From Pelomyxa schiedti (taxonomy: Eukaryota > Protista > Evosea), in NCBI GenBank assembly GCA_020536535.1, contig JAHLWZ010000602.1, forward strand, positions 53,998-117,997: a stretch of DNA of 64,000 nucleotides. The letters run 5' to 3'. This document shows positions 1,395 to 63,752 of this stretch, in pieces. Below the pieces are notes generated by a model. It was given only the letters and a program-made list of their open reading frames with translations. It did no database searches and had not been told where the DNA came from. The translations under genes were made by a program, and so were the position numbers. The stretch's first letter is position 1; each line of letters opens with the position of its first letter.

Positions 1395-1493
1395 TTGTCG
1401 GTTACTGTGGGGTGAGGGTTTTCAAAAAAAACTTTCTTGTTCTTGTTTTCCTTCAAATTCCCAGAAGAACGAACTTTGGGTTAGAATCATCCG

Positions 1494-3827
1494 ATGGACC
1501 CGTCAACGTCCCAGAATTCCCACGCGTTGCCAGTGTCATCGTGCGATCAGCAGTGCGCTCGCAGTGAGCACGTGCTGTCGGTGTCGCGGCTCGTCTGGGA
1601 CTGCGTCGTGGTGCCCGGCTGGCTCGGCTCCGCCCCCAGCACCAAATACGAGGAACACGTGGACAGCCTCTACGGCGACGCGTCCTGGAAGAGGCACCTG
1701 CTGCGGCTGCTGCGCCTCGGCGAGGCCCTGTTCCCGCTAGCGGGGCTGTGCTGCCGCCGCGCCGCCGAGGACTGCCGCCGCGTCTGCGTTTCTCGTTACG
1801 CCCTCGTTGCCTTGGCAGCCGTGGCCCCGGCTCCTTCCTGCCTCGCCTGGGTCGTTAGGCACAACAGGAGCGGCGGAAGCGGAGGGAGCGACCGCGCGGG
1901 GGAGCATTATGGGAGGGAGTGGCGCTGGCAAGTGACGGTGAAGGAGGTGGCGTGGGTGATGTGGGGCCTCTGCTCTTCTGGGAACGAGAAGGCCCTGAGT
2001 CGCATGTTTGGTAACGAACACGGCGGCACAGAAGGAACTTTCCCGGCATTATGGGACGGGCGCCGCATCCCGGAATGGGACGATGACATTTCTACTTCTA
2101 GCTCTGCAAGAAGCAAGGCTGTGCTATTGGACCAGGTTTGTGATTACGTGAAGCCTGTATTGGATCAGGCCTGCATGTCTGGGGATTTAAACACTGTGAA
2201 GTGGATCCTGGCTTCTTCGACGTTTGGAATTTCAAGGGACGAAGCACCTTGGAGGCTTCTTGGGCCTGTAAAGTTGGCTTTGACAAGAGGCCACACGGCT
2301 TTGGTGAAGTGGCTCTTTGATGAATATGAGCTTCTTGAAACCTATGAAACTCATTCAGAAGTACTACATGAACTGGCGACGTTATGTGCAGCCGGAGAGA
2401 ACCCAGACTGTGTCAAGTGGGCAATCTTGGACTGGGTACTTCTAGACCCCTCGATTGATATCCTTTCAACAGTGTTGGTGAACGAGCATGCTTCCTTGGA
2501 ACTGTGCCAATGGGTGCAAGAGAAATGGGCAGTAGGTCAGATCGTCAGTTCCTACACAATAGAATGCATCTCGAACCCTGAAATTGCAAAGTGGGCTCTG
2601 ATAACGCTGACTTGTGAATTTACCCACGTGGACTTGAGTGTGATGTGCGCAAGTGTTGGTTTGTCGTCATTTGCAGAATGGCTAATAGCTGAGAGGCAAT
2701 TCGTACCAACCCCATCAACGTTTTTTATGGCGGGCTCTTGCAGAAGTGTAAAAGTTGAATTTCTACAGTGGCTTTCAACCAATGTTGCTCTGTCCCTCAA
2801 AGACCTTATCCACACCCTAATTAACGCTTTGCTTTTGGGGAACACCATAGTTGCAGCTTGGTTGGATCAGAGGTTCCAGGTAATGGGTTCTTGTATCACC
2901 TCGTCACTAGACCCTTCTAAGAGTGTTGCATGTACCTGTCTAGATGAATTATGTTCTACAACCAACACGGAGGGACTGCAGTGGTTCCTCACCAATCTTA
3001 CACCAAAGGCACGATCAACGATCAGTTCGGATTGTGTATGCAAGGCAATTAACACCTCAATTAGTACATGGAATTACCCTGTTACAGAGATGCTACTGAA
3101 AGCCTTCCCACACTTTGTTCCTCAGACTTCAGTTCTAGAAAAGATTTTCATCGCTTTCATGAAATATGGTTTTTCCAAGCTGAAGTGGCTTGTTTCGTTC
3201 ATTGATTACTCATCACTGTTGGCAATACAAGGCTTTGTGGCAAACTGCCTGTGCACCAAGAAATTCTTTCCATATTCAACCAAGGTTGTCAAGTGGATCA
3301 TCACACAGTTCCACGTTGGGCGTTCTAGTATCATGGTTTCTCACGGTCGCCTCCTTTTCCGCATGCTTCATCTACACAAAATGGCTGGTGCCAAGTGGCT
3401 CATAGACACCTTCAAAATCTCATTTGCAGAGGTGGCCTAACTGTTATTCACTATTACTAAAAAATACCAGGTTATGAATATGTTTGACCACATGCTTCCA
3501 TCTGCAGACTACTTCGATATCAACGTGGCAACCTGGAGGATGCTGCTGAACAAGTTCCCAGAAATCGACCTTCATACCATCAACAACCACATGATGCCCA
3601 TTGTGGCCAGGTCACCATTCATAGCAACATTCACAATCAAAAGGTTTTGTAGGGACAGCACTGAGATTACTACTCTGCTTGATGCAGTTCGCCAGTACCA
3701 TACCGACAAACCAGAACCATCACCGACGTGTGAAGTGTTTCTATGGTTGGGAATGCAATTGCGGATCGACATTTCTTCAAACACAACCACGGTACTGTTT
3801 TTTGGCTCAAAACGTGGAACCACATAA
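1494..3827 (+). CDS. Lineage-expanded ankyrin-like helical repeat protein (2 exons)
   Basis: ORFs 1494-3440 and 3474-3827 are in the same frame and are joined by a 39-nt GT-AG intron (3432-3470) that contains the stop. Degenerate ankyrin-like units are present (ACMSGDLNTVKW, ALTRGHTALVKW, ALLLGNTIVAAW). Confidence 0.65.
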
Positions 3828-4012
3828 AGTGGAGCCTTTGAGGTTGTTGAAGCTCTTTGCCTTCCAAATTAGCCTCTGCAAGTGAAACGGGAACCCTTGT
3901 GTTCGATTGGCGGAATGAAATAATCAACAGACCGGAACGCTGTCAATTTCTTCAAAAACTGGCAATCATTCTCGGTTACCAGAACAACAACAGTTTGAAG
4001 AGATTACTTTTG

Positions 4013-5298
4013 ATGGCTGACAATAGTGTGTTTCCACCTTGTTGCCAACCCAAAGAATTATATTTATTTATTATTAATTCAAGGCGGGCTGCACCCACGA
4101 AGCCAGTTACTGCTCCAGGCTCTTTTCATGTTGGAGGAGGGAAGTCTTGACAGTGCAATTCGCCTTGTTTCGGATGCTTTCAAGCATTTTGAGAGCTGTC
4201 GCCTAACCAGTACCTTTGGCCGTAAAACACAGTGTTTTCAATTTACGATTAAAAAAAGGTCCTGATGACGATGTGGATGAAGATGATATGCTGGAATTGT
4301 GTTACCTTCCTGGCTTACTATTTCTTTTTGGTCTGGGTTGTGTCATCAAAGATCACACCGCCCTACATCAACGCCTTCCTTCAACCCTTAAAGTTGCATT
4401 TTCTCGTGCTGTTTCCTGCTCTGGTTCGCTAATGGGAGACCTGTGCAAGGCTGTGATGTTGTCAGCCAAAAGCTTGGTGGAATCTCCCAGAAATGATGAA
4501 AAAGTGCCACCAGTGACTTCCCTCTCTGAAGAGTGGGATGCCCTTTTTGAAGAAGTATCACGTTCCATTCAGGAAGGTGATCACAATATACAACAAAGTT
4601 CATGGGCACGTATGTATTATGTCGCGCTGTGGACAACTTTCTGCTTAGAGAGCAGTGAATGCGAGCGCCACTGGACTACGTTGTCAAGAATGGATGTTCT
4701 ACGGAATTCAACGACCGCCCTTCAGCAGACTGAATGCAGCGAAAACAACTGTGATCAGAGTACAGTGAAAACACCGGAGGAACCAGTAACCCTCTTGCCT
4801 TCTTCCTCTCTGTCATTCCTCGGTTTATGCTACAGATATGGTCTTGGAGGCTTGGACAAGGACCCAAATAAGGCGGTGTCACTATTCCACAGTGCTGCCG
4901 AAGATTCTGGCAATCCCCACGCAACAAATCACCTTGGAATGTGTTACAAAACCGGCGATGGTGTTGACAAGGATGTAAACAAGGCCGTAACACTTTTCAT
5001 GCAGGCTGCTGATTCCGGCAATGTCCCAGCAATGAATAACCTCGGGGTGTGCTACTTCCACACTGGAGAGGGTGTTGAGCAGGACAAGAAAAAGGGCTGG
5101 TCACTTTTCTACAGGGCTGCTGATGCTGGGGATTCCGGGGCAATGCTGAACCTGGCCTTGTTGTATCAGAAGGTGCACAGTGACCCCAGAGAGTCACTTT
5201 TGTTCTTCAGATGGGCCTCTGACAATGGGTCAAGGCTTGCCCGTTTCCAGCTAGAAAGGCTTCTGGATGACCCTCTTTATTGGAAATCCTTGGCTTGA
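4013..5298 (+). CDS. SEL1-like repeat protein
   Basis: Tandem SEL1 repeats (LGLCYRYGLGGLDKDPNKAVSLFHSAA; LGMCYKTGDGVDKDVNKAVTLFMQAA; LGVCYFHTGEGVEQDKKKG). Two short 5' exons are predicted. Confidence 0.85.
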
Positions 5299-6458: not shown

Positions 6459-8319
6459 CTACGTCGTTTTTGCTAGGTCACGCCAAGCTCTGTCCAACAC
6501 AATGAAGAAGTCCTCAAACCAATCAATCCTACAAATAATGTTAGAAAATATGCTTTCCCTGGCTGCTTTTTTTTTAGAAGTAGAATCGTACAAATAGTTC
6601 TTGAAATTGAAGAGCTGGTGCACACAACCATCAAGTGTGAAGAGTAGCAAGGTATTTCCACCAGTTGCAGTGACCTGGAACGTGGTTGGTGCAGTGGGTG
6701 ATGCCCTTGCTGTTGTTGCTCTCCTAAGGGAAACAATACTTCTGAGAGGTATCACAACACGTAATGGAACAATAGTGGGAGTTGGCGCAGCTTTTTGTTG
6801 AATTAAATTAGATATTAGGTACCAAAAATAAAATAGGTAGGGATCATACGTTTTGGCTTAAGAGTCCATGCAAGTATTGAAGAACTGGAACCAGATTCTT
6901 GGGTGCTGACAGGCGGGGGCTTTCCTGTCCCACTGAAGATAAGGAAATTGGTGGTGATTGTCACATATCCCTCAAAGGCATAGGGACCATTCAAAAGAAA
7001 GGAGTGGAAGTCCATGTGAAGAATTTCCTTTGTTGGAAGGCCAAGTTCTCTAAATCTATCATTGCTGCTCTCTTCCACCTAAGAGAAGTTACACCAACAG
7101 AAGTTCTTATAATTAACTACTTTGCTTTGGTATTCCGCAGAAAGTGCTTCAGAACAGCGATCAACAACATTTTTGGCATGGAAAAGGGTATCGTACATTG
7201 TAGCCTGAAGCATGGTTAGTTTGCAACTGAGCCGAATAAGAGGACGGCACCTGTAAACTTCCAAAAAACGAGCCTTGCTTTCTTCTTTGCTCTTGCTGAT
7301 CTTGGAAAGCTTTACCACGCTCGGCATTCATCTGTACCCTATACTGCTTGAGTTTTTCACGGTACTCTTTTGGTGTCTCTTCAGGGATTGGAGCAAGAGG
7401 AAGAGGTGCATTCGAGCTGTACTTGCCTAAAATAGCCAAAAAAAAGTTAGGTCCATCCATTCAATCACTCAAACCCCCTAACCCAGAGCACCACCATCAA
7501 AAAATTTTGATCAAGCATAACAAAGGAGGGGGAGGCAGAAAAAAAAGACTCACCAGGAACGTACGGCCCAAGGAAAAGTGATTGCACCACCTTTGTTTCG
7601 TACTGCTGCTGCTCCAGCGTGTCCAAATGAGCGAAAGACAAGTAATTTGGCTGCGTGACTATCACGGGCTTCTTGGCAGGGCCCCCCGGCGCCGTCCCGT
7701 CCACCGCCGACGCCGTAATCGGCGAGATTCCCGACTCTGAAGCAGCCGCGGCCGAAGCAGAAACGGGCACAACGCCCCCATCGGAGTTGGCACTGGAGCT
7801 GCTACTTGTAGTAGTCGTCGTCGTGGTGGTCGTTGTAGTAGTAGTAGTCGTGGTCGACGAAGAAGCCGCCGAGGCAGAGGTTATTGGAGTGGTTGCCGCC
7901 GCCGCCGCCGTAGTCATTATGGGTGCCGCAGTGGAAACAGCCGCGGCCTCGTCTTGCGCGTCGTCGGCCGCGGCGTCGGCGGCCGATGCGGCACACCGCG
8001 ACGAAGACGACGCCGACGAATCGATGTACTCGTCTGCTGCGGCACCGGTACTGAGACCAGACACAATGGTAGTAGAAGTCGTTGTTGTTGTGGGAGTGGA
8101 TGGGGTGTCGGGGTCGACGGGCGGCATGTAGCTGCTGTTGTTGATGGGGCACAGTGGCATGGTCAGGGACGTGACTTGGGCCTCAGGCTCAGCAGCTGCT
8201 TCTGCTGATGTCGCGGTAGTCGTCGGTTGGTTGCCGTCGGCAGCGGCTGTGTTGTGTTCGACGAGGGGCGTCGTGGCTGGGGCGTCCACGGGCTGTTCCG
8301 GCTCTGAAGCGTCCATCAT
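6459..8319 (-). CDS. GRAM/PH-like domain protein with an Ala/Thr/Ser low-complexity N-terminus
   Basis: Spliced ORFs give FRELGLPTKEILHMDFHSFLLNGPYAFEGYVTITTNFLIF...VIPLRSIVSL, which fits the GRAM pattern. Confidence 0.6.
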
Positions 8320-8471
8320 TTTTGTTCTCTCTTTTTTTTTTCGCGTTGTTCTTTTGGGTTTTCGAATGAACCGTTGTTGCCCGGTGATTGCCTAGGTTTG
8401 ATTGCGAAAAAGAGTGCGGTGTAGATCCATGATGGGAGACTCACCCATCATTCCAAAACTTTCTGTTTCTT

Positions 8472-17336: not shown

Positions 17337-18422
17337 ATGGGCATACGGCCAGAGGAGGGCAAAAAAACAGACGGGGCTGTTGTTGAGGCCGGTAGCGTTT
17401 TTGATGAAGGGGTGCTGAGGAGTGTGTGTTGGCATTTGAATACATGGAGTGATAGGGTTGCATTTGCTGCTGTTTGTAAGGTACTGTCAAAAAATGGAGG
17501 CACTGCTTATTTTTTTTTTTCCCCCTCTTCCTCTATTACTTGTTTCTGGGATGCAAGGGAATGAATAGCTTACTGTGAAACAACACTCACTAAGAAATGG
17601 AGAACATTAGCAGGGGAGCTGTGGGGAATTGGACGTGATCCCGACTTGGACAAGGAGATACAGAAGCACGTGAAGTGGACCAACCTCTGCTGCGCCGAAT
17701 TCTGGGCGACCCTCTCCCTGGCGCCCGCGTTCGGCCTGCTCCTCGCCGCGGCCCCGCCCCTCCTCCTCGGCCTCGCCCACCTCTCCCTCAGCGTCCTGTC
17801 CCTCGCCACCTGGCTGCTCCTCGCCGGCGGCGGCAGGGGCGGCTGCCGCGCGGAGGCCCCCAGCCTGCTCCTCCTCCTCGCCGCCCACAACCTCGGCTTC
17901 AGCGCCCACCTCGACTCCCTGCTCTGGCCCGCGCCCCCGGCGCCCCCCGCGCTCCCCCTGCGCCTCCCCGCCGCCGCCGTCTCGGGCGTGCACCTCCTCC
18001 TCAGCTCCCTGTGGACCACCTTCGAGGTCGTCAACGTGCGGTGGCGCCAGGGCGTCGCCCTCGTGCTGGGCCTGCGGGCCGCGACGCTGGCCCTCGTCCA
18101 CTTCGCCCCGGCCCCCGCGGTCCTGCTCTGCTCCCTCGCCCTGGCGTCCGTGCCCGCCGCCGCCCTGTGGGTGCACCTCGTCCACGCCACCATCGGCGAA
18201 CACTGGCTCTACCGCAGGGTCCCGACCCGCCTGCCCCACAACGTGCTCATGGTCCGCCACAACTGGCACGTGCTGGCTGCCTTGTTGTCCGCCGCTCTCT
18301 CGCTCGGCTTGCACTCTGCCCCTGCGGCGCTGCTGGGCCTGTCGCGCCCGCTTCTAACGGTGCTGTGTGGGGCTGCTGTTGTGCATGTGATTATCTCTGC
18401 TCTGTTACTCGAGGTGAAGTAG
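17337..18422 (+). CDS. F-box-like N-terminus plus multi-pass membrane protein
   Basis: Exons 1 and 2 give VFDEGVLRSVCWHLNTWSDRVAFAAVCK-KWRTLA (F-box-like). The GC-rich exon 2 encodes many Leu/Ala hydrophobic segments. Confidence 0.55.
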
Positions 18423-23912: not shown

Positions 23913-24782
23913 ATGTTGTTTGCGCGAACCAGCACGAGGATGCACGTTATTATATACCTGAGCATATCGGCCACTTCAGGGGTGATGTTGGCCGTTGGCC
24001 TGCTCATGATTTGGTGCGGGGTGTCGCCGACGCTGTCCCATCATTGGGAAACGGCGCTGTTCGTGCTGGCCCAGGTAGTCGTGGTGGCGATTCTGTTCGC
24101 GCCGGTGGTGATGAACCTGGCTACTTTGTTGTGGCTCACGAGGACAAAGGCAGCAATGCCTTGTGTAGTATCCACTGTTATCGAGTGTGCAAGTGTTGGT
24201 GCCCTCATAATGCACACGTATTCTGCTGTATCAGGTTTGTTTGCATGTCATTCTATCTTCCAATATTTTACTTTTTTTTTCCCCTTTTTTTTACATTATT
24301 GGTATTCAATAGCAGTAACCGGAAGTAGTAATAGTAATAAACAAAAAAAAAAAAAAGAGAGTATCGACTGCAGCGGTTCGCTGTGCAACTACGATTACGT
24401 GTTCTGCGCCGGCATAATCATCTCCCTCGTGTGCTGCGCCTCCAACGCCATAGTGTCAGTCATTCTGCTCTCTAAGATACTCTTCCAGCTCGGCGGCGGC
24501 CGGTTGCACGACCGCCATACGCTGGTGTTCTCACGACCGGCACCCAGGCCCATGCCACCCCCATCACCTCGGCCGCTGTACAGTGGCGGCCACGTGCATT
24601 ACTTTGGAGAGGATGAGGACATTCAGGGTGGCGACGACGCTGACAGTGGGAATGGGAATGATGGGAATGGCAACGGGCATGGAACTTGTGGTGGCGATGC
24701 CGGCGACGGCGATGGTGATGCGTATTACAGTGTAGTGAGCGGTGACAATGGCACCACCCAAAGTGACAATGGAGGTGAATGA
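23913..24782 (+). CDS. Multi-pass membrane protein (about 4 TM) with an acidic Gly/Asp tail
   Basis: Four hydrophobic segments. An AT-rich in-frame stretch at about 24235-24360 is a probable intron. Confidence 0.55.
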   Translation: MLFARTSTRMHVIIYLSISATSGVMLAVGLLMIWCGVSPTLSHHWETALFVLAQVVVVAILFAPVVMNLATLLWLTRTKAAMPCVVSTVIECASVGALIMHTYSAVSGLFACHSIFQYFTFFFPFFLHYWYSIAVTGSSNSNKQKKKKESIDCSGSLCNYDYVFCAGIIISLVCCASNAIVSVILLSKILFQLGGGRLHDRHTLVFSRPAPRPMPPPSPRPLYSGGHVHYFGEDEDIQGGDDADSGNGNDGNGNGHGTCGGDAGDGDGDAYYSVVSGDNGTTQSDNGGE

Positions 24783-38170: not shown

Positions 38171-39712
38171 TTACGCGCTAGGCCTCCAAGTTGTAATGTA
38201 TACAACACCTTGTGGTTGATTGACATTTGGGGCAGGTCCGGCTCCAGTAAAGGCACCATGAAGGCCGCGGGCTTCGCACATCAGAGACCAGTGACACAGG
38301 CCGATTCCGGCATCGAGGGATGTCATAAAACTGAGTTGGGAGTGAGTGAGGACAGAAGGAAGAGGATGGGATACTTGGCATCCGTGTAGAAGAAATGGAA
38401 TTCAGTTCCGGTGTACACAATTCTCCAGGCTTGTGTGTTGCGGCTGGAATTGATTTGATGGATGTGTTTGCAATGGGTTTTTTGTTGTGGGAGGGCACTT
38501 ACGAGGAAGGTCCTACTCTCACGGCTTCAAAGCAGGCCTCATATGGTCCAGCTTTCTCACGTGTAAGAGGGGTTGAAAATGTTTGATAGAAGAATAGTGT
38601 ACTCCACTGAAAACGGCTGGTTGCGGATATGCTGGGGAGTATTGATGTTTGTAAGAGTTGCTTATTATTGAGTTGTATATTACCTGCTTAAAGGAAGCTT
38701 TTTCAATTCTTTTTTACCGAAAAAGCCACCAGTGTTGGAAAAGTGATACCCAACAGGTGACACTGCAGGAATAAACTCGGTTGCAGGAAGATTCACCACT
38801 TTTGTCCAACTGTGTGTTTTGTGTGGGTTATCCATAGTAGTCAGATCAAAGCATTAGTCTCTTTTTTGTAAGGAAGGTACTCAACTGGTCTCTGTTGAAT
38901 GTGCCTGCAAGCCATACAGTTCCTAAGTCCATTTGGGCAGCCCTTATCACCAAGTCCTCAAAAACAAATCCCAAGTCAATGAGCCCCCGTGGATCCTTCG
39001 GTGACCCGGGAGCCATCCACTTCAGCAGAAGTCCTTCATCAAATCTCAGTGTTTCCACTGTCTGTAGTCCAGTAGCCACAGAACCAGAAGTTGGACTAGA
39101 AGCAGAACTTGAACTTGTGGTTGAAGTAGAGGTAGAACCAGAGCCAGAAGCTTCAGTTGGAGTTGGAGTTGCAGTTGTTTCAGTTGCACTTGAACCTGAA
39201 GCAGTACTTGTACTTGCAGGGCTGGGACTTGGAATAGCAGCAGTAGAAATGCAAGACCATTCCTTTGGAGCCGTTCCCACAATCCAAACTGAGGAGCCGC
39301 TGCCCTGAGGCCACCAGGACCCCGATTCCACCTTATCCAGTACATGGACCCCCAACTTGCTGCCAAAAACGGGCCCGGGCCTGGCCGACGCCGCAGTTGC
39401 ACGAGCCTGCAGATCTGAGACCTTCTCGGGCTCGATCGGCAACCGCGAGTTGAAACTGCGGACCGACCGCCTGTTCTTTATTGCCGTTTCGACGTCGTCT
39501 AGATGCTTCATGCTCTCGGCCCCATCATCAGATTTGGGTGCCGGCGGGGCTGCACTTTCTGAAGATTCTGAGGCTGTTGTGGTTGCTGCAGCTGATGCTG
39601 TTGCTGTTGATGTTGCAGATGGTGTTGGTGTTGGGGAAGTGGAGGGGTCTGTGGACGAAGTAGTAGTAGGGGCATCGGAATTATGGGACGTGGAGGAAGT
39701 GGAGTCAGACAT
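38171..39712 (-). CDS. Nitroreductase, TM1586-like tandem-domain type, with a Ser/Thr insert
   Basis: AIKNRRSVRSF, DLGFVFEDLVIRAAQMDLGTVWLAGTFNR, IPAVSPVGY, AVRVGPSSRNTQAWR, LDAGIGLCHW. Confidence 0.88.
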
Positions 39713-40008
39713 CGCGGTTTCGGTTTGCTTGTTTTGTTGTTTTGTATTGTCATTTTGTTGACAACAAGATATTATGATAAAATCTGATAATGTTTACCTG
39801 GAGTTCCGAAGCTCGCAATGTTCCAGATGGTTGCAAAGACATCTCACAGGTGGGTACAACCGGATACCTTCGACGCCCTGCAATGCTGATGTTGAAGTTC
39901 CAAAAAAGTTCCCCCAAGCTTGTCCAACTTGCCCCAACTTTTTCCCATCTCCAGCCCCACACAAAGGAACAACTTTTCAAACAAAAAACCCCAACCATCA
40001 AACAACAG

Positions 40009-43000
40009 ATGCAAAACAGCGGTGGTGCCGCTACTCCCACAAGCCCGTCGTCGCAGCAGCCGCCGCGCACCTTCCCGCCCCAGGCCAGCGGGGCGCTGTC
40101 CAGCACGCCCCCCACGTCGCCGCTGACCCCAGCCACCCCCGCTCCCTTCCCCCTCTCCCCCTCCTTCACCTCCCCAGCCACCCCCGCCAGCCCTTTTCTC
40201 TTCCAGTCCCCGCCCCCGGCCCCGTCCTCCTCCCCCTCCCCATCGCCATCGCCGCCCCCTTCTTCGTCTTCGTCTTCGTCTTCGTCCTCGTCCTCGTCCG
40301 CGGCCTCGGCCTCGCTCTCCGCCTCGCCCACGTCGCCCCACACAGGGCGAGGCGCCGCGAGCAGCAGCCCCACCGGGACGGTGACGGCGTCTGGGACGCC
40401 GCTGGGGGGCCGTCGGCCGCGGACGCCGCCGCTGGGGCCCCTGCACAGCCCCCACAACACCGGGCTGCTGGAGCCTGCCTTCCAGTCGTCCGGCTTCGCG
40501 GCGCACAGCACGCCGTGCTCCGTCCCCCACGTCTCTGTCTCGCCGACTCGCCCTGTGCTCTCCACGCCGAATGCAAATGCAAATTCAAATGCAACTGCGG
40601 TGACGGGGAGCCCAAGGGAATACATTTGCTATGTATGCGGAAAGAAGGACCACCTTTATGGGAAGTGTGAGGGGTTGACTCCCATTGGCGACGTATTGGA
40701 AGAGTTGAGGCAGAATTTATGCTGTAAAACTCTACCTGAGTCGTTTCTCAAGGTATTATTTTTACTTGTCTCCCTTTGCTTTTCCATCCTCTGTATCTTC
40801 CATCCTCATCCTTTTTTTCCACAGAAATTGCGCTCTTTGTGTGAGAATCCTGGCAACATTGACTATTGCCATCAAATTGTGGAGCATCTTCTTCACAACA
40901 AACTACCAAGAGAGAAACTTGCAGCTGAGGTGGATATCATCAACAAAGCACCCAGGGAGAAACTTGCCGCAGAAGTGGATGCCATCAACCAAGTACACAG
41001 GGAGAAACTTGCAGTTGAAGTGGGTGTCTGTCTCCAGCCAACCAGTTCTCAATTTTCAGAATCGTTTCTGACGTACCAAAGGAGAGTGGCACTTAATCAG
41101 TCTTTTTTAATGACGCTTCCCCTGTGGATTCAATTCAATATTGAGGCATGTGGTCTGTCCACACAATTGCAGTCCTTGATAGAGACAAATGACAGCAAAG
41201 CCTTAGAAAGGCTGTTCAGGCCCAGGACGACGAACCTGGACACGGGGCATCTTGGATATTCTGGCATATATGGCTCACTTTCGGCATTACTCTCGGCGAA
41301 GATAACTGAATCAAAGGATAACCCCCCTACCTTGAGTTTGAACCGAGTAAATTGGCGCCATGGAAGCAGGCTAGATCGCAAAATTAAGCCAGAAAGCTGT
41401 TTGCACATTTCCGGAAAAATTTCAGCTGCACTTGGAGAGAAACTAATAATGGCGCCATGTTCTGTGGAGATTCTTGGGCACAAGTATTCATTTCTATGTG
41501 CAAAACAAGGAAAGAAGAGCAATGAGATATCTTTGATTTTCATTTGTGAACAAGATGCACGAATGACTTGTGACGAAGTTGAAATATCAGTTTCATCTTC
41601 TCTTTGTAATTTTTTTTATAGATACGAGAATGGCATATACCCAATGAATTTAATAACACTATGGCGCTTTCAAAGTGGTGCTCCCGTTTTCAGCTGATGC
41701 TATCTTCAACTACACCTTTTGAAATTAAGGACCCAGTGGCCGTACGATTAAGTTCGGCTAAGAAAAACTTACAGTTTATGCAGCACATTTCCATTGGTAA
41801 CGATATCTGCGCAAGGAATGATTCCAAGGCTCTCTTAACTGATGGCATTAGTCCAGGACCTGAATGGTTGTTTAGACAAGTCCAAACTTCGCTCGGATTC
41901 TCTAGGACACCTTTCGTTTTGCAGTTCAGACTGGGATCAGCTAAGGGTTGCCTCTACTTAGATAAAAAGCAGCCCAATATTTGTATGTAATTTTACAGCG
42001 AAAGGTTTATAAAACTTACATTACTTAGGTTTGGTGCCCTCACAAGTGAAATATCACTACTCCAATGACCCAAAAACTTGGGCTTTTCCTTGCTGTGGTC
42101 CTATTGACTTTGAACTGTGATACGAACAAGAACACCAATAATATTGCTGAACTTAATTGTAGATGTAACTATTCTCGTGATAGCGGACCTGGACATCTAA
42201 ACCAAGAAAGTATCATGGCCCTGGAGGCACAGGGCGTCCCATTTGAGGCACTTGTATCATTGCTGCAGGAGGTAAGCTAGTGAACTTGTTTTACTTTCTT
42301 AATTGGTGCAGGAGGAAGATGACATTGCAGGATTACCGTTTTTAGATGCCCACCAACTAATGCGGAAGTACCGCTATTTACGTGACGATCCATTTAATAG
42401 TGATGCATCAAAACTGTATCATATGCTTGATGCGGGTTTTGATATTGATCATCCCATTGTTCGGTTTTTTATTAAAGCACTGCAAGAGGTGATGTAGTCA
42501 AACTGACATTTACATAAACTAACTTGGCCTAGGGTGAAGTCACTTTCCTTAAAGAAAAACACAATATTACCGTTAAAAAATCAAGGCATCTCATGGCAGT
42601 GGCTGATCCCACCCGCACATTACCACCCAACTGCATATACTGCTCCATTACTGGGTACGAAGGCTCGCAAGCCGATTTGCCTATTGGGGAGCTCTCTGGC
42701 CCAGTTCTCATCTCAAGGTTAGTTGCATAAAGAGGATCCACAACGGTTCTTAAAATTGAGAAAAAGGTCTCCCTTAAATGTGCCTCAAGACATGAAGATT
42801 TTTCAAGCCACGTCAAATGAGGAGCTCAAAGCATTAGGTGCCATGGATTGTGTCATATTTTCGACACATGCTGATTGCCATTGCTCGCCCATTTCTGAAC
42901 TTTCTGGTTCTCTCTCTTCCCCTTTTCCTAGCTAAAACCTAAGCAGGAGGGGACTATGATGGTGACGCAGGTCAGTGGCTTTTCCAAAAAAATCGGTCAC

Positions 43001-44430
43001 TGACACAGTAATAGTATTCATATCCTGGGACACGCGTTTGCTTGAACATTTTGCCCCTTGTCCAAACCATCACCCAGCAGGAGATATCCCACTTGAACCC
43101 ACCTTCACGGCAATGATCAAGGAGTTCCAACACTCACAAGCAATGTGTGTCTGGCTTCAAGCAATAGAAAGATCTGATCTTGGGAGGATAGCTTTTTACC
43201 AAGTACATCATCTTGTAGTTCTCTTACTATTAGTTAACACCTGACCAAGTATTGTGTTGCTGATGAAAAAGGCTTTGGACATCCAGATTCTTTGCAGCTG
43301 GGGTTCTGGCGATCTAAGGCGGTTGACGCCCCTAAGCAGGTTCAAATCTGAACTTTGTGAGTGACTGGGATCACCAACGAGAAAAAAAGGGTTATAGAAT
43401 TCCAAAGATCACCATGAAAGATGTCCGTCCCCCAGATTGGTACAACAGAATTCATGATAAAAGTACATCCCAGGCGAGAGTCTCAGATAGTTACAATGGC
43501 AGGGTTGCAAATTACTTGAAGGCCATTGACCCAGAGACCTTCACTTCCCCCAAGTTCCCCGAAATCCCCTTTGGGCAACAGGATCCTGATACAGCATTGG
43601 ATCTATTTGTGCCCGATCCCGCTATTCGTCAGGTTCTAGAGTGTGAAGTCCGTACAATTTTGTCAGAAATAAACCATAAGGTGCTTCTTCATTTTCATAT
43701 TGCTTAAAGTCATGTCATGCAGTTTGCCCGAGCAATTGACGCCAAGGCAGACCCCAAAGTAAAAAGTGATATTTCCACCGAGCTGAACCAAAGAATTTTG
43801 CAATTAATGGACTCTAAGAGCCCAAAAGGGCCTGCCTGCTGGGACCTTGGATGGGACATGGCCGTTGGAGCGGCCCTTCTTACAGTTAATGAGAAAATGT
43901 GCGCACAGAGACAAAAGCTGCAAAAAGCAGTATGGTTGGCTTTTCCTGAACTACTGTGTGCCGTCAAAGCGTACGGTGTGGTCAGGCGGATGCAACAGAG
44001 TTCAGCATATACTGGAAATATACTCCGTGTACCTTTTATGAGAATTCCCCGTCACTTACAGACAAGAAAACTAGCACCAGCAAGGCCTCCCCGCTCTAGC
44101 ACTACAATCACCAGCCCAACAACTACAACTGTAACATCCTCCCCCACCGCGATCACACCAACACCCTCAGTTGATTCCGGTGTGAATTCTACAACAAGTG
44201 CCGAATCAAGCCCAACAACACTCCAAAGAAGTACCCATGAAATACAGACGCAACCACCACAATCTGCACCTGCAGCCCAGAACTCACTTCCAAATACCAT
44301 TCCAACACCAAATGTAGAAAGTGTGACACCAACGCAACAAGCAACCCAAAATGCAAATCCTTCCGCACATGCTTCTGTTGTGACCTTCAGACCTGAGGCC
44401 ACAACTCAGCAACTTCCTCAAAACATGTGA
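40009..44430 (+). CDS. Eukaryotic (RNAi-type) RNA-dependent RNA polymerase with an N-terminal CCHC zinc knuckle
   Basis: KWCSRFQLMLSST, TDG, QFRLGSAKG, LNQESIMALEAQGVP, LMAVADPT, ISRSPLNVPQD, DCVIFS, LSGGDYDGDAVFISWD, AVDAPKQG. Zinc knuckle CYVCGKKDHLYGKC at 40627-40668. Confidence 0.92.
40906..41022 (+). repeat. About 2.6 copies of a 45-nt coding tandem repeat (PREKLAAEVDxINxx)
   Basis: The unit GAGAAACTTGC recurs at 45-nt spacing. Confidence 0.8.
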
Positions 44431-44720
44431 TACTAATGGAAAAGAAAACTTTTTTCTAATTTTGCAACAAATTCCTGTGTCGACACCCTGCCCGTTTCCC
44501 CACCAAGTCATTGGGAAGACTCAACTTAGTTTTAACCCACCAGGAATGAAACTAAGCTTAGTATACTAGTTCCGTGTACGAAATTCGGCACCCAAATACT
44601 GAAAATAGAAAGAAACTTTCTGGCTATGTCAACCGGTGAATAACAAAACACGAGAGGTGCCAGGCAAAACACCCAAACAAAACCACAAAAAATACAATCG
44701 ACTGCCTGTAAGAGTTAGAG

Positions 44721-46856: not shown

Positions 46857-48190
46857 TCACAACATCACCAATGCGAGGCTCAATATAATCGGCATAACAA
46901 ATAACAACAACAGGAAATTGTGGCGTGATATCCCTTGCCCTTGGATGTCAGCCTGAAGCACAATAGCTCTGTAAGTTTTCATCTTTTGAAAGGTGAAACG
47001 ATTAGTGCATGCATTTTTAGCCTGTTTGTGCTTACCAAGTAGACACCACAAAAGCCACCTAATAAAAAGCAAGAGATCAACATGATAGCAGTTGAACTGG
47101 TCAGCATGCTTATAAGTGTACAAACAACAACTCTTCTCTGTGTCAGTGAGAGCATTTTGTTTTTGTAGACACCTACGGTACAAAGACATAAGAGCAGTAG
47201 GCAAATGAGTCTAGCATGGAAACTGGTAATGAAAGAAAGTAGTTGCACGCCATCATTACAAACACTTCTAGTACTAGTAAAACCAATCCTTTGCTTGCCG
47301 TGAGGCCAATTGCTTCTGGAGTGAATCTTTGCTCATGTTAAGGGAGTTATGGTTGCAGGGAGGACAAGAGTACTTGTTACTTGTACCAAGCTTGAAACAT
47401 ACAAGGAGAACCCAGGATATGAATCCCATCATCGGAATATACAAGTCAGGAGCATTTAAATCGTCTAGAACTAATTAGAAGGCTCAACTTGTACTCTTGA
47501 AGAGAACCTCGGGGTAAATACCAAGATTGAGTTGTATTTGTGCATTGTGCTTGCCTGTGCCAACCACCCTATTATTTGTAAGAATATAACTACGAAGTTG
47601 ACAAATGAATTTATTAATTGCATGTTGTGGAAATGTACCTCATGGAAGAAAGGAAAGAGAATGAGCCGTATTTTTTGCATCACGTAAGAGTTGTTAACTT
47701 GGAAGTATGATTTGAGTAAGTTTGTAATCCATCCCTGTTTAACAGCATAAGCAAAGGCGAGAAGCAGCGTACAGTGAGACTCTCAAATAACAACAACTTT
47801 ACCATGACAGGGGAAAAAAGAAAAGAAAAGAAAAAAAAAGAGGGGACGAGAGAAAGGAGGAGGTACAAAATACGGCCGAATAGTTGACGTGATTGCGGGC
47901 TTCACGAAATTCGAAGCCAAAACGCCACTAGGCAGCGCCCACTGCGCGGCGCCCAAACTCGTAGGCAAACTCCACGCTCCCCCGCCGCCGCCACCTCCTT
48001 CGCCATCAGCGCCGCCTCCGCCGCTGCCACCAAGCCCCCCAAACGAGAATCCAAATCCTCCCATTCCCCCGCCGCCGCCGCCGGGCGTGGTGCCTCTGCC
48101 GTTGCCGTTGGAGTTGGTGCCGCCGTTGACCCCTCCGCCTTCTACAAACGCGGGCAGGCTGAGAAGTGAATCCTCGCCACGGTATGTCAT
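46857..48190 (-). CDS. YIF1: YIF1 ER-Golgi trafficking membrane protein
   Basis: KSYFQVNNSYVMQKIRLILFPF and DDLNAPDLYIPMMGFISWVLL are Yif1 signatures; multiple TM segments. Confidence 0.9.
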
Positions 48191-48612
48191 GCTGGTTTGT
48201 TGAATGTCGAGTGAGTGTGTGTGTGTGTGGGGTGTGCACCCAGACAACCGCACTTTACAATGGTGCTGTGCTTGCTGTTTGTGTTGTTCTCTTTGTCGTA
48301 ATGTATGACCCGCCGGCCCCAAGTGTGACTCAGATCTTTGATTTTTTCCTGTTCTTTGAGATCTGCATCTATCTCTGAAAAGTGGCTCTCACCTCAGAGG
48401 CCAGCCACGACCCTTTCCTGCAGTTGCAATTGGTTTTCCAGATACCTTTGGATGAAGTATCTGCAGAGAGACTCCAAGTCCTACCAATTTGTTTCCTTCA
48501 ATTCACCTGAACGGTGAGACTCACAACGCTGAAAACCGACGAAAAAACCAGTAGCATAGGCGGTTTTTCTCTTTCTTCTTTTATACTCAACAACACAAAA
48601 CAAACGTTGGTA

Positions 48613-60965: not shown

Positions 60966-63752
60966 TTACGTGATCATGATGGCGTTGGCTGATCGGTGAT
61001 GGTGGTGGTGGTGATGATGTGTTGCTGCCTGGAAAGCCACAGCGCATCCTCCCCAGGCCCACTGGCCCACCCCCTGTGAGTCGGCAACAGGGGAGCACCA
61101 GGGTGCAGGCAAGGGAACCGAGTGGGCTCCCGGAACCTCTGCCCGCAACCCCGGGTCCCCACGGCCTACTGACACAAAGGGTGGGCTGGGGAGGAGTGCT
61201 GTGACCAACCAAACAGCCAAACACACACCACCACACCACCAAAGGTGCTCCACAGACAGTGCCAAACGGTTTGAATTGCCGCCGCAGAGGCCCAGCAGCA
61301 AAAGAGAGAGAGCCACACATTCAACCACGTGCACACGACGGCACAGTGTCACTGCGGTCCTGCAAAGCCAACGATAAAGCCAGTGCCACCAAGTGAAGCA
61401 AAGCAAAGCCGTCAGAGCACCGGGACGGGGACCCGCAACAGGGGGATAATCGTCATCATCTTTAGTTGGCGCCACCGCCACCGCCACCAGCAACAGCAAC
61501 AGTGGCATCAAGGGCTTCGTTGATCGGCTTGCCATCCTGAAAATATGTGTAAGTGCAACAAGAAGTGAAAGGATGACAAGGCATCATTACCAGTTTTTGG
61601 ACTTGCCGTACTGTCTGTGGAATTGTACTTTCCAAAGGCTTAGGAACCAACAACGGTGTTGTAGAACTCGCACTCGTGCTCGTGCTCGTTCGAGGTGCAA
61701 GGGTGGCGGCTGATGTGGTTTGTATTGGGGTCCCTTGCGGAGCTGCTGGTCGTGATACGAAATGGATTATTCTCCTAACCCTCTTGTTGGCTGGGGGTGC
61801 TGCTGATGGTGGTGGTGGTTCCACTGCCGCCGCTCGAACAGGTGCTCCTGGTGTAGTTGTTGCTGTTGGGGGGGTTGTTGATGATGCCACCGATGGGGGA
61901 AACAGGGGTGCTGTGGGTGATTTCGGTGGAATCGGTTGGAGTGCTGGGTGTGCTGGTGTCGTTGTTGTGGGTGCCGGTGCTCCCAATGATGTCTTCTTGT
62001 CTTCGGGTCTGATTGGGGTTGTTGGCATTCCGGCCCTTGAGGTCGAAATGGGTGAGACTTTGGGCGGAATTACTGCTGCACCACAGGCTTGAATGTTGGA
62101 TGTGCTGGTGGTTGGCGCGGGTGCCGGCGACGGCGTTGTGCCGGCTCCTGTAACCACCGTCACTCCTCCAACTGATGGTGACGACTGTGCTGAAGATGAC
62201 ACCTGTTGCACATTGCTGGCGCTGATTGCTGTTGGCGTTGGCGTTGCCCTTGCTGCAGCTGGAACCGGTGTTGTCAGCTGTGTTGATGTAGATGGGGATG
62301 GGGACGAAAACGATGAGGGCGAGGGCGAGGGCGAGGGCGAGGAACGACAATTCACGCCACTGTTATGTGCGCCAGCAGCAGATCTGCGCCTGTTTGACCC
62401 GAATCTAGAGGCAGGCAGTGAGAATTCATCACAAAACAGTGCATGACGCCTCCTCCAGTCGAATACCGAAGCAGCCATTGCTATTTCCACGCGAAACAGC
62501 AGCACGTGACTTCCCTCGGGTGTTGTTGGTGGAGATGGTTCATCGGGATTGTATGGGGGTATTATAAGATGGTCTTGGTCTCGGTCTTGCTGATGAGGAT
62601 GATGGTAACTTCTCTCGGAAGATGATGACCGTTGAAATGGAATCAGAGCCAGTTGGTGGTGCTGTTGTTCATCGGGATTATTGTGGAGAGGTCGAAGGAC
62701 TGAAAGGAAATGTTGGATAACCGCGGCAGCCATGCGCCCAATGCAATGGAACTTGAAGAACCAGGAAGAGGTCATCGTGTGCATTGCAGCGCCCACGTCC
62801 GCTCGTACATCCAACGCATTGGACTTCCGCACATCGGAGCAAACAGAAGAAATCCACGATGATAGCAGCGAAATATAAGCTCGTCCAAGGTGGTACATAT
62901 CCACAAGCTCCATTGCCGCGAGATACACGACGTATCCCGTGCCGACGATCAGAAGGAAGGTCACCAAGAAAGCACAAGGAACAAGAAGAGTCAGGCATGT
63001 GACCAGCGACTCAACCATGCGCCCAACGTCCCACAATACCTCCTTCAGGTCAAACCACCGCCAAGAGCATCGTGACCACCACCGTGACGATGATGCCGAT
63101 GAGTCGTTGCTGTAGTAAGTGGAGGTACTATGCCAGTTCTCGTCAGCAAGCCCCAAGTGGCTGAGTGCGTTCTGTAGCAACGTCTCCCAAATTTCCGTGC
63201 GCCACTCTTCGAAGTCGGCGCTGTCTTCCCTCCCAACTGCAATTTGTGACATTGCAAGTGTTGAGGAGTGGGCGGACCTGGTCAACTCCTCGACAAACAT
63301 GGCCCAGTCCTGTGTTTGTTGTTAGCTGTGTAATGAGGTGTATCCATTTTCCATGATAGACCAAAATCAAAACAACAACACGCAAGACCACAAGATAGAG
63401 GAAGAAGAAATCCAAGTTGTTTACTTATTAGTAGAAACACACAAACAAAAAAACGCAAGAAGAAATTTAATACCGCAACGGCCGAGTGACTCCTTCTGAA
63501 GAAGGGCAGATCAACCGCAGGCCTCATGGATTTAATGACTCCGAACCGACTGTGTGGTGTCGAAAAAAAAATCGTAAGAAAAAAAGAACAAATGGGCACT
63601 ACGACAAACCTTGCGGCTCCGAAGACGAGGAACATCGAGGCCATCACAACCCACCACGACACCGCGTAAATTGCAAGTTTCAACGCCACGTAAACGGCGA
63701 CTCGTAAAACCGCCTCGTTCAACAACCACTGCATCATTGCTGTTGTTTGCAT
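60966..63752 (-). CDS. Hypothetical membrane protein with a long Pro/Thr/Ser-rich region
   Basis: 612-aa ORF 61462-63300 plus flanking hydrophobic exons (63282-63752 and 60966-61535). Confidence 0.55.

What the first reader, a model, noticed from the sequence alone, without database searches (positions are those of the whole stretch)
40009..44430. QDE-1-like RNA-dependent RNA polymerase fused to a CCHC zinc knuckle and disordered Ser/Pro arms
Seen: all cellular RdRP motifs are present in order after splicing. A perfect C-x2-C-x4-H-x4-C knuckle follows about 200 aa of Ser/Pro low complexity, and there is a Thr/Pro-rich tail. Known: the motifs GGDYDGD and RSPxxxPxD resemble Neurospora QDE-1 rather than DLDGD-type RDRs, and cellular RdRPs usually carry an RRM or helicase appendage rather than a zinc knuckle. 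The usual DGxGxIS is changed to DGISPGP. Inference: this is a divergent small-RNA amplification enzyme with a built-in single-stranded nucleic acid reader, implying an RNA-silencing pathway in this amoeba.
Basis: partly seen in the sequence, partly recalled or inferred. Interest (0 to 1): 0.8.

Follow-up and report, generated by a model that had tools for sequence, protein, structure and literature searches.

The report
Amoeba RdRP with probable zinc-knuckle head
This is a real, spliced and transcribed RNA-dependent RNA polymerase gene of the anaerobic amoeba Pelomyxa schiedti, already annotated publicly in a shorter form; its reading frame very probably extends upstream into a Ser/Pro-rich arm and one CCHC zinc-knuckle motif found in no related polymerase, but no RNA read proves that join.

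Summary
A 14-exon gene on the + strand (40009 or 39790 to 44430) encodes a cellular RdRP: PF05183 scores 292.7 bits and the catalytic DYDGD sits on a 24-nt micro-exon. RNA contigs confirm six GT..AG introns in the 3' half. The organism is Pelomyxa schiedti.

GenBank already lists the gene as 'rna-dependent rna polymerase 1', 928 aa, starting at ATG 41110. That model omits the Ser/Pro arm and the knuckle (CYVCGKKDHLYGKC, 40627-40668).

The upstream part is very probably coding and in frame:
- There is no stop from 39781 to 41694, and no in-frame ATG between 40009 and 41110.
- Only 2 of 5000 shuffles of 40594-41109 stay stop-free.
- Codon usage is exon-like in the RdRP frame only.

No RNA covers the 5' half, annotated exons included. 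The knuckle is below Pfam cut-offs (PF13696 18 bits; PF00098 no hit) and absent from all 186 relatives examined.

'QDE-1-like' holds only for the motif. The protein pairs with a Mastigamoeba RdRP that carries an MBD, and lies outside the fungal QDE-1 clade.

An RNAi kit is present: four PAZ+Piwi loci, two RNase III loci and a second RdRP fused to a nucleotidyltransferase.

Verdict: a known enzyme with a plausible, unproven new appendage. Interest is moderate to low.

The parts
39790..40008 (+). Possible further 5' coding extension. The first in-frame ATG is at 39790; the true start is uncertain between 39790 and 40009.
   Evidence: Same stop-free frame. In-frame ATGs lie at 39790, 39883, 39889 and 40009. 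Codon score is 0.178 per codon in the RdRP frame, the best of six frames but by a small margin.
40009..40626 (+). Ser/Pro-rich low-complexity N-terminal arm (206 aa, GC about 0.74).
   Evidence: Composition and GC. All frames are open here and codon scoring is ambiguous. Its inclusion follows only from the lack of any in-frame ATG between 40009 and 41110.
40627..40668 (+). CCHC zinc-knuckle motif CYVCGKKDHLYGKC.
   Evidence: Exact C-x2-C-x4-H-x4-C, unique in the six-frame window. PF13696 gives 18.2 bits, E 0.0022, below the cut-off of 27; PF00098 is not reported. The segment has no paralogue in the genome.
40753..40824 (+). Putative 72-nt intron. It is in frame, so the frame holds whether it is spliced or retained.
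   Evidence: GT..AG borders, pyrimidine-rich, GC 0.38 like the other introns. Its codon score is not exon-like. No RNA evidence.
40825..41109 (+). Part of exon 2 upstream of the annotated ATG (95 codons). It includes a 45-nt x 2.8 tandem repeat at 40896-41023 that encodes 15-aa units.
   Evidence: Codon score 0.183 per codon in the RdRP frame, best of six, with independent training. Only 2 of 5000 shuffles of 40594-41109 are stop-free. The repeat has period 45; copies 1 and 2 differ by 5 synonymous and 2 non-synonymous codons.
41110..44430 (+). Publicly annotated CDS (P0001, 928 aa) in 13 exons: 41110-41577, 41622-41741, 41784-41982, 42029-42116, 42163-42271, 42312-42488, 42533-42717, 42767-42906, 42947-42970, 43015-43202, 43250-43339, 43390-43680, 43723-44427, plus the stop at 44428-44430.
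   Evidence: An exon-by-exon check reproduces P0001 exactly. PF05183 scores 292.7 bits.
41841..41861 (+). DGISPGP, where relatives have TDGCGxIS.
   Evidence: Relatives vary here as well (TDGCGLIS, TDGCSFIS, TDGCAPVG).
42716..42791 (+). RSPLNVPQD motif, split by the RNA-confirmed intron 42718-42766.
   Evidence: The ending PQD occurs once among 180 RdRP domains; DYDGD types mostly have P[ST]D and DLDGD types PGD.
42947..42970 (+). 24-nt micro-exon encoding the catalytic loop GGDYDGDA.
   Evidence: AG and GT borders. It is present in the public model. The 5-residue spacing to the conserved WD fits relatives only with the 43015 acceptor. No RNA contig covers it.
42272..43722 (+). Span holding the six RNA-confirmed introns: 42272-42311, 42489-42532, 42718-42766, 43203-43249, 43340-43389, 43681-43722.
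   Evidence: Joints in RNA contigs of runs X1 and X2, all GT..AG.
44065..44427 (+). Thr/Pro/Ser-rich C-terminal tail (121 aa).
   Evidence: Composition. RNA contigs cover 43723-44236 and 44257-44438. Codon score 0.217 in frame.

Best explanation
The locus is an expressed, multi-exon gene for a cellular (eukaryotic, double-psi beta-barrel type) RNA-dependent RNA polymerase of Pelomyxa schiedti. It has an intact DYDGD catalytic loop.

Shown: the gene, its 13 annotated exons, transcription and splicing of the 3' half, and family membership.

Inferred, about 0.7: the real protein is about 1271-1344 aa and not the annotated 928 aa. It would begin at ATG 40009 or 39790 and carry, ahead of the polymerase, a Ser/Pro-rich disordered arm, one CCHC knuckle motif and a short 15-aa repeat region.

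Inferred from what the family is known to do: the enzyme copies single-stranded RNA into dsRNA or short antisense RNAs. These feed the amoeba's Argonautes, with or without its RNase III enzymes.

Speculative, about 0.4: the knuckle binds zinc and single-stranded nucleic acid and helps recruit templates.

The appendage looks like one more case of changeable N-terminal modules in this group of RdRPs. The nearest relative has an MBD; others among the 40 nearest have a chromodomain, an RRM or a helicase.
For: RdRP identity:
- PF05183 scores 292.7 bits on P0001 and hits exon pieces by reference.
- DYDGD is present.
- 1905 relatives at E<=0.001 in the exhaustive search.
- Solved RdRPs are matched at E 1e-15 to 2e-22.

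Expression: six GT..AG joints in RNA contigs, with RNA running to just past the stop codon.

Extension:
- One stop-free frame runs 39781-41694. It holds both the knuckle and the start of the RdRP domain.
- There is no in-frame ATG between 40009 and 41110.
- 2 of 5000 dinucleotide shuffles of 40594-41109 stay open.
- With codon usage trained on 15 other open frames of the window, the knuckle segment (0.054) and 40825-41109 (0.183) score best in the RdRP frame. So do all 11 annotated exon segments. Introns and the 3' flank are negative in every frame.
- A 45-nt (15-codon) tandem repeat has mostly synonymous differences between copies 1 and 2.
- Relatives have 327-569 aa ahead of the Pfam domain, against about 75 in the public model.

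Knuckle:
- Exact spacing, unique in 127,996 six-frame codons.
- Sub-threshold hit to zf-CCHC_2, E 0.0022.
- Tyr after the first Cys and Gly after the second, as in canonical knuckles (read from the sequence; the comparison is from my own knowledge).

Variable modules: MBD in Mastigamoeba P0045, chromodomain in P0044/P0188, and RRM or helicase in others.
Against: - No RNA contig covers anything 5' of 42191. This says little either way, because annotated exons 41110-42190 are uncovered too.
- The public annotation starts at 41110, and no database protein contains the knuckle.
- PF00098 gives no hit and PF13696 is below its cut-off. The motif is not among the 100 best PF00098 matches of the genome.
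- No relative has a knuckle, and nothing upstream of P0001 residue 85 is alignable to the Mastigamoeba protein.
- Codon scoring of the Ser/Pro arm is ambiguous. Its GC (0.74) is unlike the rest of the gene.
- The protein sits on a long branch (1.5 changes per site) with unusual motif variants (PQD, DGISPGP), so altered or reduced activity cannot be excluded.
Confidence: 0.68

Rival explanations
1. The public 928-aa model is right. Translation starts at 41110, and the upstream open frame (Ser/Pro arm, knuckle, repeats) is 5' UTR or untranslated sequence, so there is no fusion.
For: The GenBank model P0001 starts at 41110. No RNA or database protein covers the knuckle. No relative conserves it. 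The GC-rich arm has all frames open and an ambiguous codon score.
Against: A 172-codon stop-free run in frame with the CDS occurs in 2 of 5000 shuffles. Codon usage is exon-like in that frame only, for both non-repetitive upstream segments. A 15-codon repeat shows mostly synonymous differences. A 1.1-kb 5' UTR would be odd beside a divergent neighbour gene whose ATG is at 39712. Gene predictors tend to skip atypical GC-rich low complexity (inference).
Confidence: 0.25
2. The extension is translated, but the CCHC pattern is a chance or degenerate motif, or a protein-contact element, and does not read nucleic acid. The Ser/Pro and Thr/Pro arms are the generic low-complexity insertions of this genome.
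For: Below the Pfam cut-offs. It is a single knuckle and is not conserved. GC-rich low-complexity open frames recur in the window, and the neighbouring nitroreductase-like gene carries similar Ser/Thr-rich stretches.
Against: The exact pattern is the only one in 127,996 six-frame codons. It also has the canonical Tyr and Gly positions. The genome uses real knuckles widely (at least 100 PF00098 matches), including in an XRN exonuclease.
Confidence: 0.3
3. The gene is a decaying or catalytically altered paralogue, and the canonical DLDGD RdRP on contig C351 does the real work.
For: Long branch; at most 35% identity to anything among 1.84 billion representatives; unique PQD and DGISPGP variants. 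The paralogue scores 537 bits to PF05183 against 293 here.
Against: 13 exons with intact frames and splice sites, an intact DYDGD, spliced transcripts and exon-like codon usage throughout. The Mastigamoeba sister is also intact.
Confidence: 0.07

Closest known systems
Neurospora crassa QDE-1 and its fungal orthologues (DYDGD-type cellular RdRPs; PDB 2j7n, 5fsw)
   Same: PF05183 domain. Catalytic DYDGD (PMC4861493 gives DYDGD for QDE-1). A poorly conserved, non-catalytic N-terminal part. An R-x-P-x3-P-x-D motif ahead of the catalytic loop.
   Different: Only the catalytic segment aligns, at 66-70 bits. The fungal QDE-1-type clade (99% support) excludes this protein. QDE-1 types have P[ST]D where this one has PQD. 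No QDE-1 relative examined has a knuckle.
Mastigamoeba balamuthi RdRP (EukProt EP00727 P009064; P0045, 1475 aa)
   Same: Nearest named relative and sister in both trees (97-98% support). It is an archamoeba, is DYDGD type, and has a long N-terminal region ahead of the domain.
   Different: 31% identity. Its N-terminus carries an MBD (23.2 bits, just over the cut-off) and no knuckle. There is no detectable similarity upstream of the polymerase.
Plant-type DLDGD RdRPs (RDR2; PDB 7w84/7w82, 7eu0, 7roz)
   Same: Best whole-domain match among solved structures (82.6 bits over query 124-599). Same order of motifs.
   Different: DLDGD and NPxxHPGD in place of DYDGD and SPxxxPQD. An RRM-type N-terminus (my knowledge) in place of a knuckle. 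The genome's other RdRP (C351) is the true member of this group, at 366 bits.
CCHC zinc knuckles of RNA-binding proteins (Pfam PF00098 and PF13696; for example Lin28, CNBP, retroviral nucleocapsid)
   Same: Exact C-x2-C-x4-H-x4-C spacing, with an aromatic residue after the first Cys and Gly after the second. The Asp-His pair also occurs in the first Lin28 knuckle (my recollection, not tested here).
   Different: Scores below both Pfam cut-offs. It is a single copy where most such proteins have arrays. Zinc and RNA binding are untested.
RDRC-type assemblies (S. pombe Rdp1-Hrr1-Cid12; Tetrahymena Rdr1 with Rdn nucleotidyltransferases)
   Same: An RdRP working with accessory RNA-handling modules. 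In this genome the other RdRP is fused to a PAP/TUTase-like nucleotidyltransferase.
   Different: The gene studied here has no helicase or nucleotidyltransferase. Its only candidate accessory module is the knuckle.

Membership tests
Eukaryotic cellular RdRP (Pfam PF05183) | Profile match above the curated cut-off (23.8 bits) | tested here: met
   292.7 bits on P0001, profile positions 65-573. Exon pieces reach 50.5 and 35.2 bits by reference.
Eukaryotic cellular RdRP (Pfam PF05183) | Catalytic D-x-D-G-D loop with three aspartates | tested here: met
   GGDYDGD on micro-exon 42947-42970. These columns are invariant in the alignment of 40 relatives.
Eukaryotic cellular RdRP (Pfam PF05183) | Double-psi beta-barrel catalytic fold | not tested
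   No structure was predicted. The fold is inferred from sequence matches to solved RdRPs.
Eukaryotic cellular RdRP (Pfam PF05183) | RNA-templated RNA synthesis | not testable with these tools
   Needs an enzyme assay.
QDE-1 (fungal DYDGD/gamma-type) clade | DYDGD variant of the catalytic loop | tested here: met
   PMC4861493 gives the QDE-1 motif.
QDE-1 (fungal DYDGD/gamma-type) clade | Placement inside the clade of QDE-1 orthologues | tested here: not met
   IQ-TREE (LG+C20, 51 rows): the 20 fungal QDE-1-type rows form a 99% clade without it. It pairs with Mastigamoeba in an unresolved set of protist DYDGD lineages. FastTree on 180 rows agrees.
QDE-1 (fungal DYDGD/gamma-type) clade | Closer to QDE-1 than to DLDGD RdRPs in overall sequence | tested here: not met
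   PDB search: 82.6 bits to a DLDGD chain (7w84) against 66-70 bits to QDE-1 chains, which align only over query 360-539.
CCHC zinc knuckle (PF00098 / PF13696) | C-x2-C-x4-H-x4-C ligand spacing | tested here: met
   40627-40668, the only instance in the six-frame window.
CCHC zinc knuckle (PF00098 / PF13696) | Profile score above the curated cut-off | tested here: not met
   PF00098 is not reported even at E<=10. PF13696 reaches 14.8-18.2 bits against a cut-off of 27. The motif is absent from the genome's 100 best PF00098 matches.
CCHC zinc knuckle (PF00098 / PF13696) | Part of the expressed protein | tested here: inconclusive
   Frame continuity, shuffles and codon usage support it. There is no RNA cover and it is not in the public model.
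CCHC zinc knuckle (PF00098 / PF13696) | Zinc and single-stranded nucleic-acid binding | not testable with these tools
   Needs biochemistry.

The most novel reading that the evidence does not exclude
Pelomyxa schiedti makes a cellular RdRP whose N-terminus carries a working CCHC knuckle on a disordered arm. This would be the first RdRP with a built-in single-strand reader. It would also be one instance of a wider habit in protist DYDGD-type RdRPs of swapping N-terminal targeting modules: MBD in Mastigamoeba and a chromodomain in an uncultured relative. That habit would wire the amplifier directly to RNA or to chromatin marks.
Probability: 0.33. Interest if true: 0.55.

Novelty: new variant of a known kind. 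Interest (0 to 1): 0.35.

Why it matters
If the knuckle is really part of the enzyme, it would be a new way of coupling template recognition to RNA-silencing amplification. It would also correct a truncated public gene model. Together with the MBD- and chromodomain-bearing relatives, it suggests that these little-studied protist RdRPs are targeted by interchangeable N-terminal readers. That could be tested in Mastigamoeba or Entamoeba-type systems. If the knuckle is not translated, the locus is simply an already annotated, divergent RdRP in an amoeba whose relatives are known to have RNAi.

Tried and rejected
- **Separate upstream gene holding the knuckle.** Two word searches sized for 351-1116 aa and 136-434 aa products found no database protein containing it. 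There is also no stop between the knuckle and the RdRP domain.
- **Knuckle as a captured retroelement Gag fragment or a repeated module.** The 53-aa segment has no paralogue in the 52-Mb genome. Its one weak match (C347, E 0.011, with an internal stop) shows no knuckle in the open frames there. Real Gag knuckles do exist elsewhere (C1656).
- **Conservation of the extension.** There is no similarity to the Mastigamoeba N-terminus. I read the contig of the best-scoring relative (P0040, locus L017); its RdRP N-terminal open frame is Asn/Gln-rich and has no CCHC.
- **Membership of the QDE-1 clade.** Rejected by the trees.
- **My first acceptor for the exon after the micro-exon (43009).** Rejected in favour of 43015, which restores the conserved 5-residue spacing and matches the public model.
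- **Literature.** No paper in the library links a cellular RdRP to a zinc knuckle, and none combines Mastigamoeba, RdRP and Argonaute. The P. schiedti genome paper does not mention RNAi.
- **The look-up of encoding contigs for P0001.** It returned nothing.
- **Not attempted.** Structure prediction and complex prediction, because there is no homologue depth for the extension.
Full report
**What is there.** The + strand between about 39790 and 44430 carries one intron-rich gene.

- Stop-to-stop translation shows a 638-codon open frame (39781-41694), followed by a chain of shorter open pieces in changing frames.
- Pfam finds the cellular RdRP family PF05183 in four of those pieces when each is given by reference.
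- A word search with the first open frame returned one protein, P0001. It is named 'rna-dependent rna polymerase 1 [Pelomyxa schiedti]', is 928 aa long and is 99% identical.
- The genome size and scaffold count of the window's assembly (52,367,397 bases, 5337 contigs) match the published P. schiedti single-cell assembly (52.4 Mb, 5337 scaffolds; PMC8887013).
- That paper reports 7.43 introns per gene. It does not discuss RNAi.

**Gene model.** I mapped 13 exons from 41110 to 44427 that reproduce P0001 exactly. All have AG/GT borders.

- The introns are 40-50 nt long.
- The catalytic loop GGDYDGDA lies alone on a 24-nt micro-exon (42947-42970).
- The acceptor after the micro-exon is 43015 and not 43009. 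Only that choice gives the five-residue spacing to the conserved WD seen in relatives.
- P0001 as a whole scores 292.7 bits to PF05183.

**Transcription.** One study holds two single-cell RNA runs and two runs that contain the whole stretch. Laid on 39700-44600, the RNA contigs cover 42191-42791 and 43143-44438.

- They carry six GT..AG joints: 42272-42311, 42489-42532, 42718-42766, 43203-43249, 43340-43389 and 43681-43722.
- So the gene is transcribed and spliced as modelled in its 3' half, and the Thr/Pro tail is in the mRNA.
- Nothing 5' of 42191 is covered. That gap includes five annotated exons as well as the knuckle, so the silence there is uninformative.
- The micro-exon is also uncovered.

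The knuckle CYVCGKKDHLYGKC (40627-40668) and the 206-aa arm before it (25% Ser, 21% Pro) lie upstream of the public start codon, in the same frame, with no stop between. Several tests bear on whether they are coding.

- In-frame ATGs exist only at 39790, 39883, 39889, 40009 and 41110. If anything upstream of 41110 is translated, the arm and the knuckle come with it.
- Only 2 of 5000 dinucleotide shuffles of 40594-41109 stay stop-free.
- I trained codon usage on 15 long open frames elsewhere in the window (4944 codons).
  - All 11 annotated exon segments score best in their true frame (0.03-0.22 per codon).
  - Introns (-0.37 to -0.54) and the 3' flank are negative in every frame.
  - The two ordinary-composition upstream segments behave like exons: 40825-41109 scores 0.183 and the knuckle segment 0.054, each the best of six frames.
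- A putative 72-nt intron (40753-40824, GT..AG, pyrimidine-rich) is a multiple of three, so the frame survives with or without it.
- A 45-nt tandem repeat (40896-41023) equals 15 codons. Copies 1 and 2 differ at five synonymous and two non-synonymous codons.
- The GC-rich arm itself cannot be judged. Every frame is open and the scores are ambiguous.
- Relatives have 327-569 aa before the Pfam domain, against about 75 in P0001.

I put the probability that the knuckle is part of the protein at about 0.7.

**How good is the knuckle?**

- The exact spacing is the only one in 127,996 six-frame codons of the window.
- It has the usual aromatic residue after the first Cys and Gly after the second.
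- PF00098 does not report it at all. PF13696 reaches only 14.8-18.2 bits against a cut-off of 27.
- It is not among the genome's 100 best PF00098 matches.
- It has no paralogue in the genome.

**Relatives.**

- The exhaustive search found 1905 relatives at E<=0.001 but only eight at E<=1e-30. The best is 35% identical.
- None of the 186 proteins collected has C-x2-C-x4-H-x4-C or a near variant.
- A Pfam scan of the 40 nearest shows only sporadic extras and no zinc knuckle: helicase in 2, and chromodomain, RRM and MBD in 1 each.
- The nearest named relative is a Mastigamoeba balamuthi protein. It is sister in both trees at 97-98% support. It carries an MBD ahead of the polymerase (23.2 bits).
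- P0044/P0188, from an uncultured eukaryote, carry a chromodomain.
- The extension has no similarity to the Mastigamoeba N-terminus.
- The contig of the top-scoring relative shows no knuckle upstream.

**Is it QDE-1-like?**

- The motif is DYDGD, as in QDE-1 (PMC4861493).
- In the mixture-model tree, the 20 fungal QDE-1-type sequences form a 99% clade that excludes this protein. It sits with Mastigamoeba among unresolved protist DYDGD lineages, between that clade and the DLDGD group.
- Among solved structures, a DLDGD plant-type chain scores highest (82.6 bits). QDE-1 chains score 66-70 bits and align only around the catalytic loop.
- RSPLNVPQD ends in PQD, unique among 180 domains. DGISPGP replaces a motif that is itself variable in this group.

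**RNA-silencing context.**

- Four loci have PAZ about 1 kb upstream of Piwi on the same strand (C803, C877, C848, C249).
- Two loci have RNase III domains. One of them also has a weak PAZ and a dsRBD.
- A second RdRP on C351 is a canonical DLDGD type: 537 bits to PF05183 and 366 bits to plant RDR2-type chains. It is fused at its C-terminus to a PAP/TUTase-like nucleotidyltransferase.
- Earlier notes of this scan already describe that paralogue as helicase-RdRP-nucleotidyltransferase (s1-377891, s1-386712). Other notes report CCHC knuckles added to several other nucleic-acid enzymes of this genome; I did not test those. I did see a knuckle in an XRN exonuclease and in a Ty3-like element.
- GC-rich low-complexity open frames recur in the window, and the neighbouring nitroreductase-like gene has similar Ser/Thr-rich runs. 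The 'arms' therefore look like a feature of the genome and not of RNAi.

**Mechanism.** By family, the enzyme should copy single-stranded RNA into dsRNA or short antisense RNAs for the Argonautes. That is inference from the family, not shown here. A template-recruiting role for the knuckle is possible (about 0.4) but untested.

**Limits.**

- Whole-protein searches used the stored public product P0001, and the extension was searched exon by exon by reference.

**Verdict.** This is a real but already annotated RdRP with a probable, unproven and lineage-specific zinc-knuckle head. It is a new variant of a known kind, of moderate to low interest until a transcript shows the join.

Noticed in passing
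G000:C351:50183-54766 (L001, open frame 691-4533): The genome's second RdRP is a canonical DLDGD type (PF05183 534 bits). It is fused at its C-terminus to a PAP/TUTase-like nucleotidyltransferase (PF22600 31.5 bits; matches GLD-2 and Trf4-type solved chains). Earlier scan notes describe it with a helicase as well. A metagenomic protein (P0148, 2070 aa) has helicase + RdRP + the same nucleotidyltransferase.
   Followed up: partly
P0045 (Mastigamoeba balamuthi, EukProt) residues 150-196; P0044 residues 324-372 and P0188 residues 424-472 (ENA contigs): The nearest relatives of this RdRP carry chromatin-reader domains ahead of the polymerase. Mastigamoeba has an MBD (23.2 bits, just above the cut-off) and an uncultured eukaryote has a chromodomain (33-37 bits). 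RdRPs fused directly to readers of chromatin marks may deserve their own look.
   Followed up: partly
window 40896-41023: A 45-nt tandem repeat (2.8 copies, 81% matches) encoding 15-aa units (NKLPREKLAAEVDII-like) lies just upstream of the annotated start codon. Copies 1 and 2 differ mostly at synonymous sites.
   Followed up: yes
window 44081: An RNA contig of run X1 reads A where the genome and both DNA-type runs read C. This changes Ala to Glu in the Thr/Pro tail. It may be strain or allele variation, since the RNA runs are from a later year.
   Followed up: no
window 41742-41783: The public model removes a 42-nt in-frame intron here (GT..AG). No RNA contig covers it, and retention would add 14 residues without breaking the frame. 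The putative 72-nt intron at 40753-40824 has the same property.
   Followed up: partly
window 38849-39712 (- strand): The divergently oriented neighbour is a nitroreductase-like gene (PF14512 32.7 bits). It has a Ser/Thr/Pro-rich N-terminus and a Ser/Thr-rich insertion inside the domain. Its ATG lies only 77 nt from the first possible ATG of the RdRP gene.
   Followed up: partly
window 1481-2070, 7601-8330, 17601-18420, 24421-24660, 47871-48220, 60971-61270: GC-rich islands (0.61-0.71 against 0.46 overall) recur through the window. Several coincide with long low-complexity open frames (Ala/Thr/Ser/Pro-, Gly- or Pro-rich), so such stretches are a feature of the genome.
   Followed up: partly
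G000:C803, C877, C848, C249; G000:C275 (L010), C866 (L011): Four loci have PAZ followed by Piwi (Argonaute candidates). Two loci have RNase III domains; the one on C866 also has a weak PAZ and a dsRBD (Dicer-like candidate).
   Followed up: partly
G000:C843:57000-64500 (L016, 1906-4107 -) and G000:C1656 (L015): An XRN-type 5'-3' exonuclease has a CCHC knuckle between its two conserved parts. A Ty3/gypsy-like gag-pol open frame of 1245 aa with Gag knuckles fills a 4-kb contig.
   Followed up: partly
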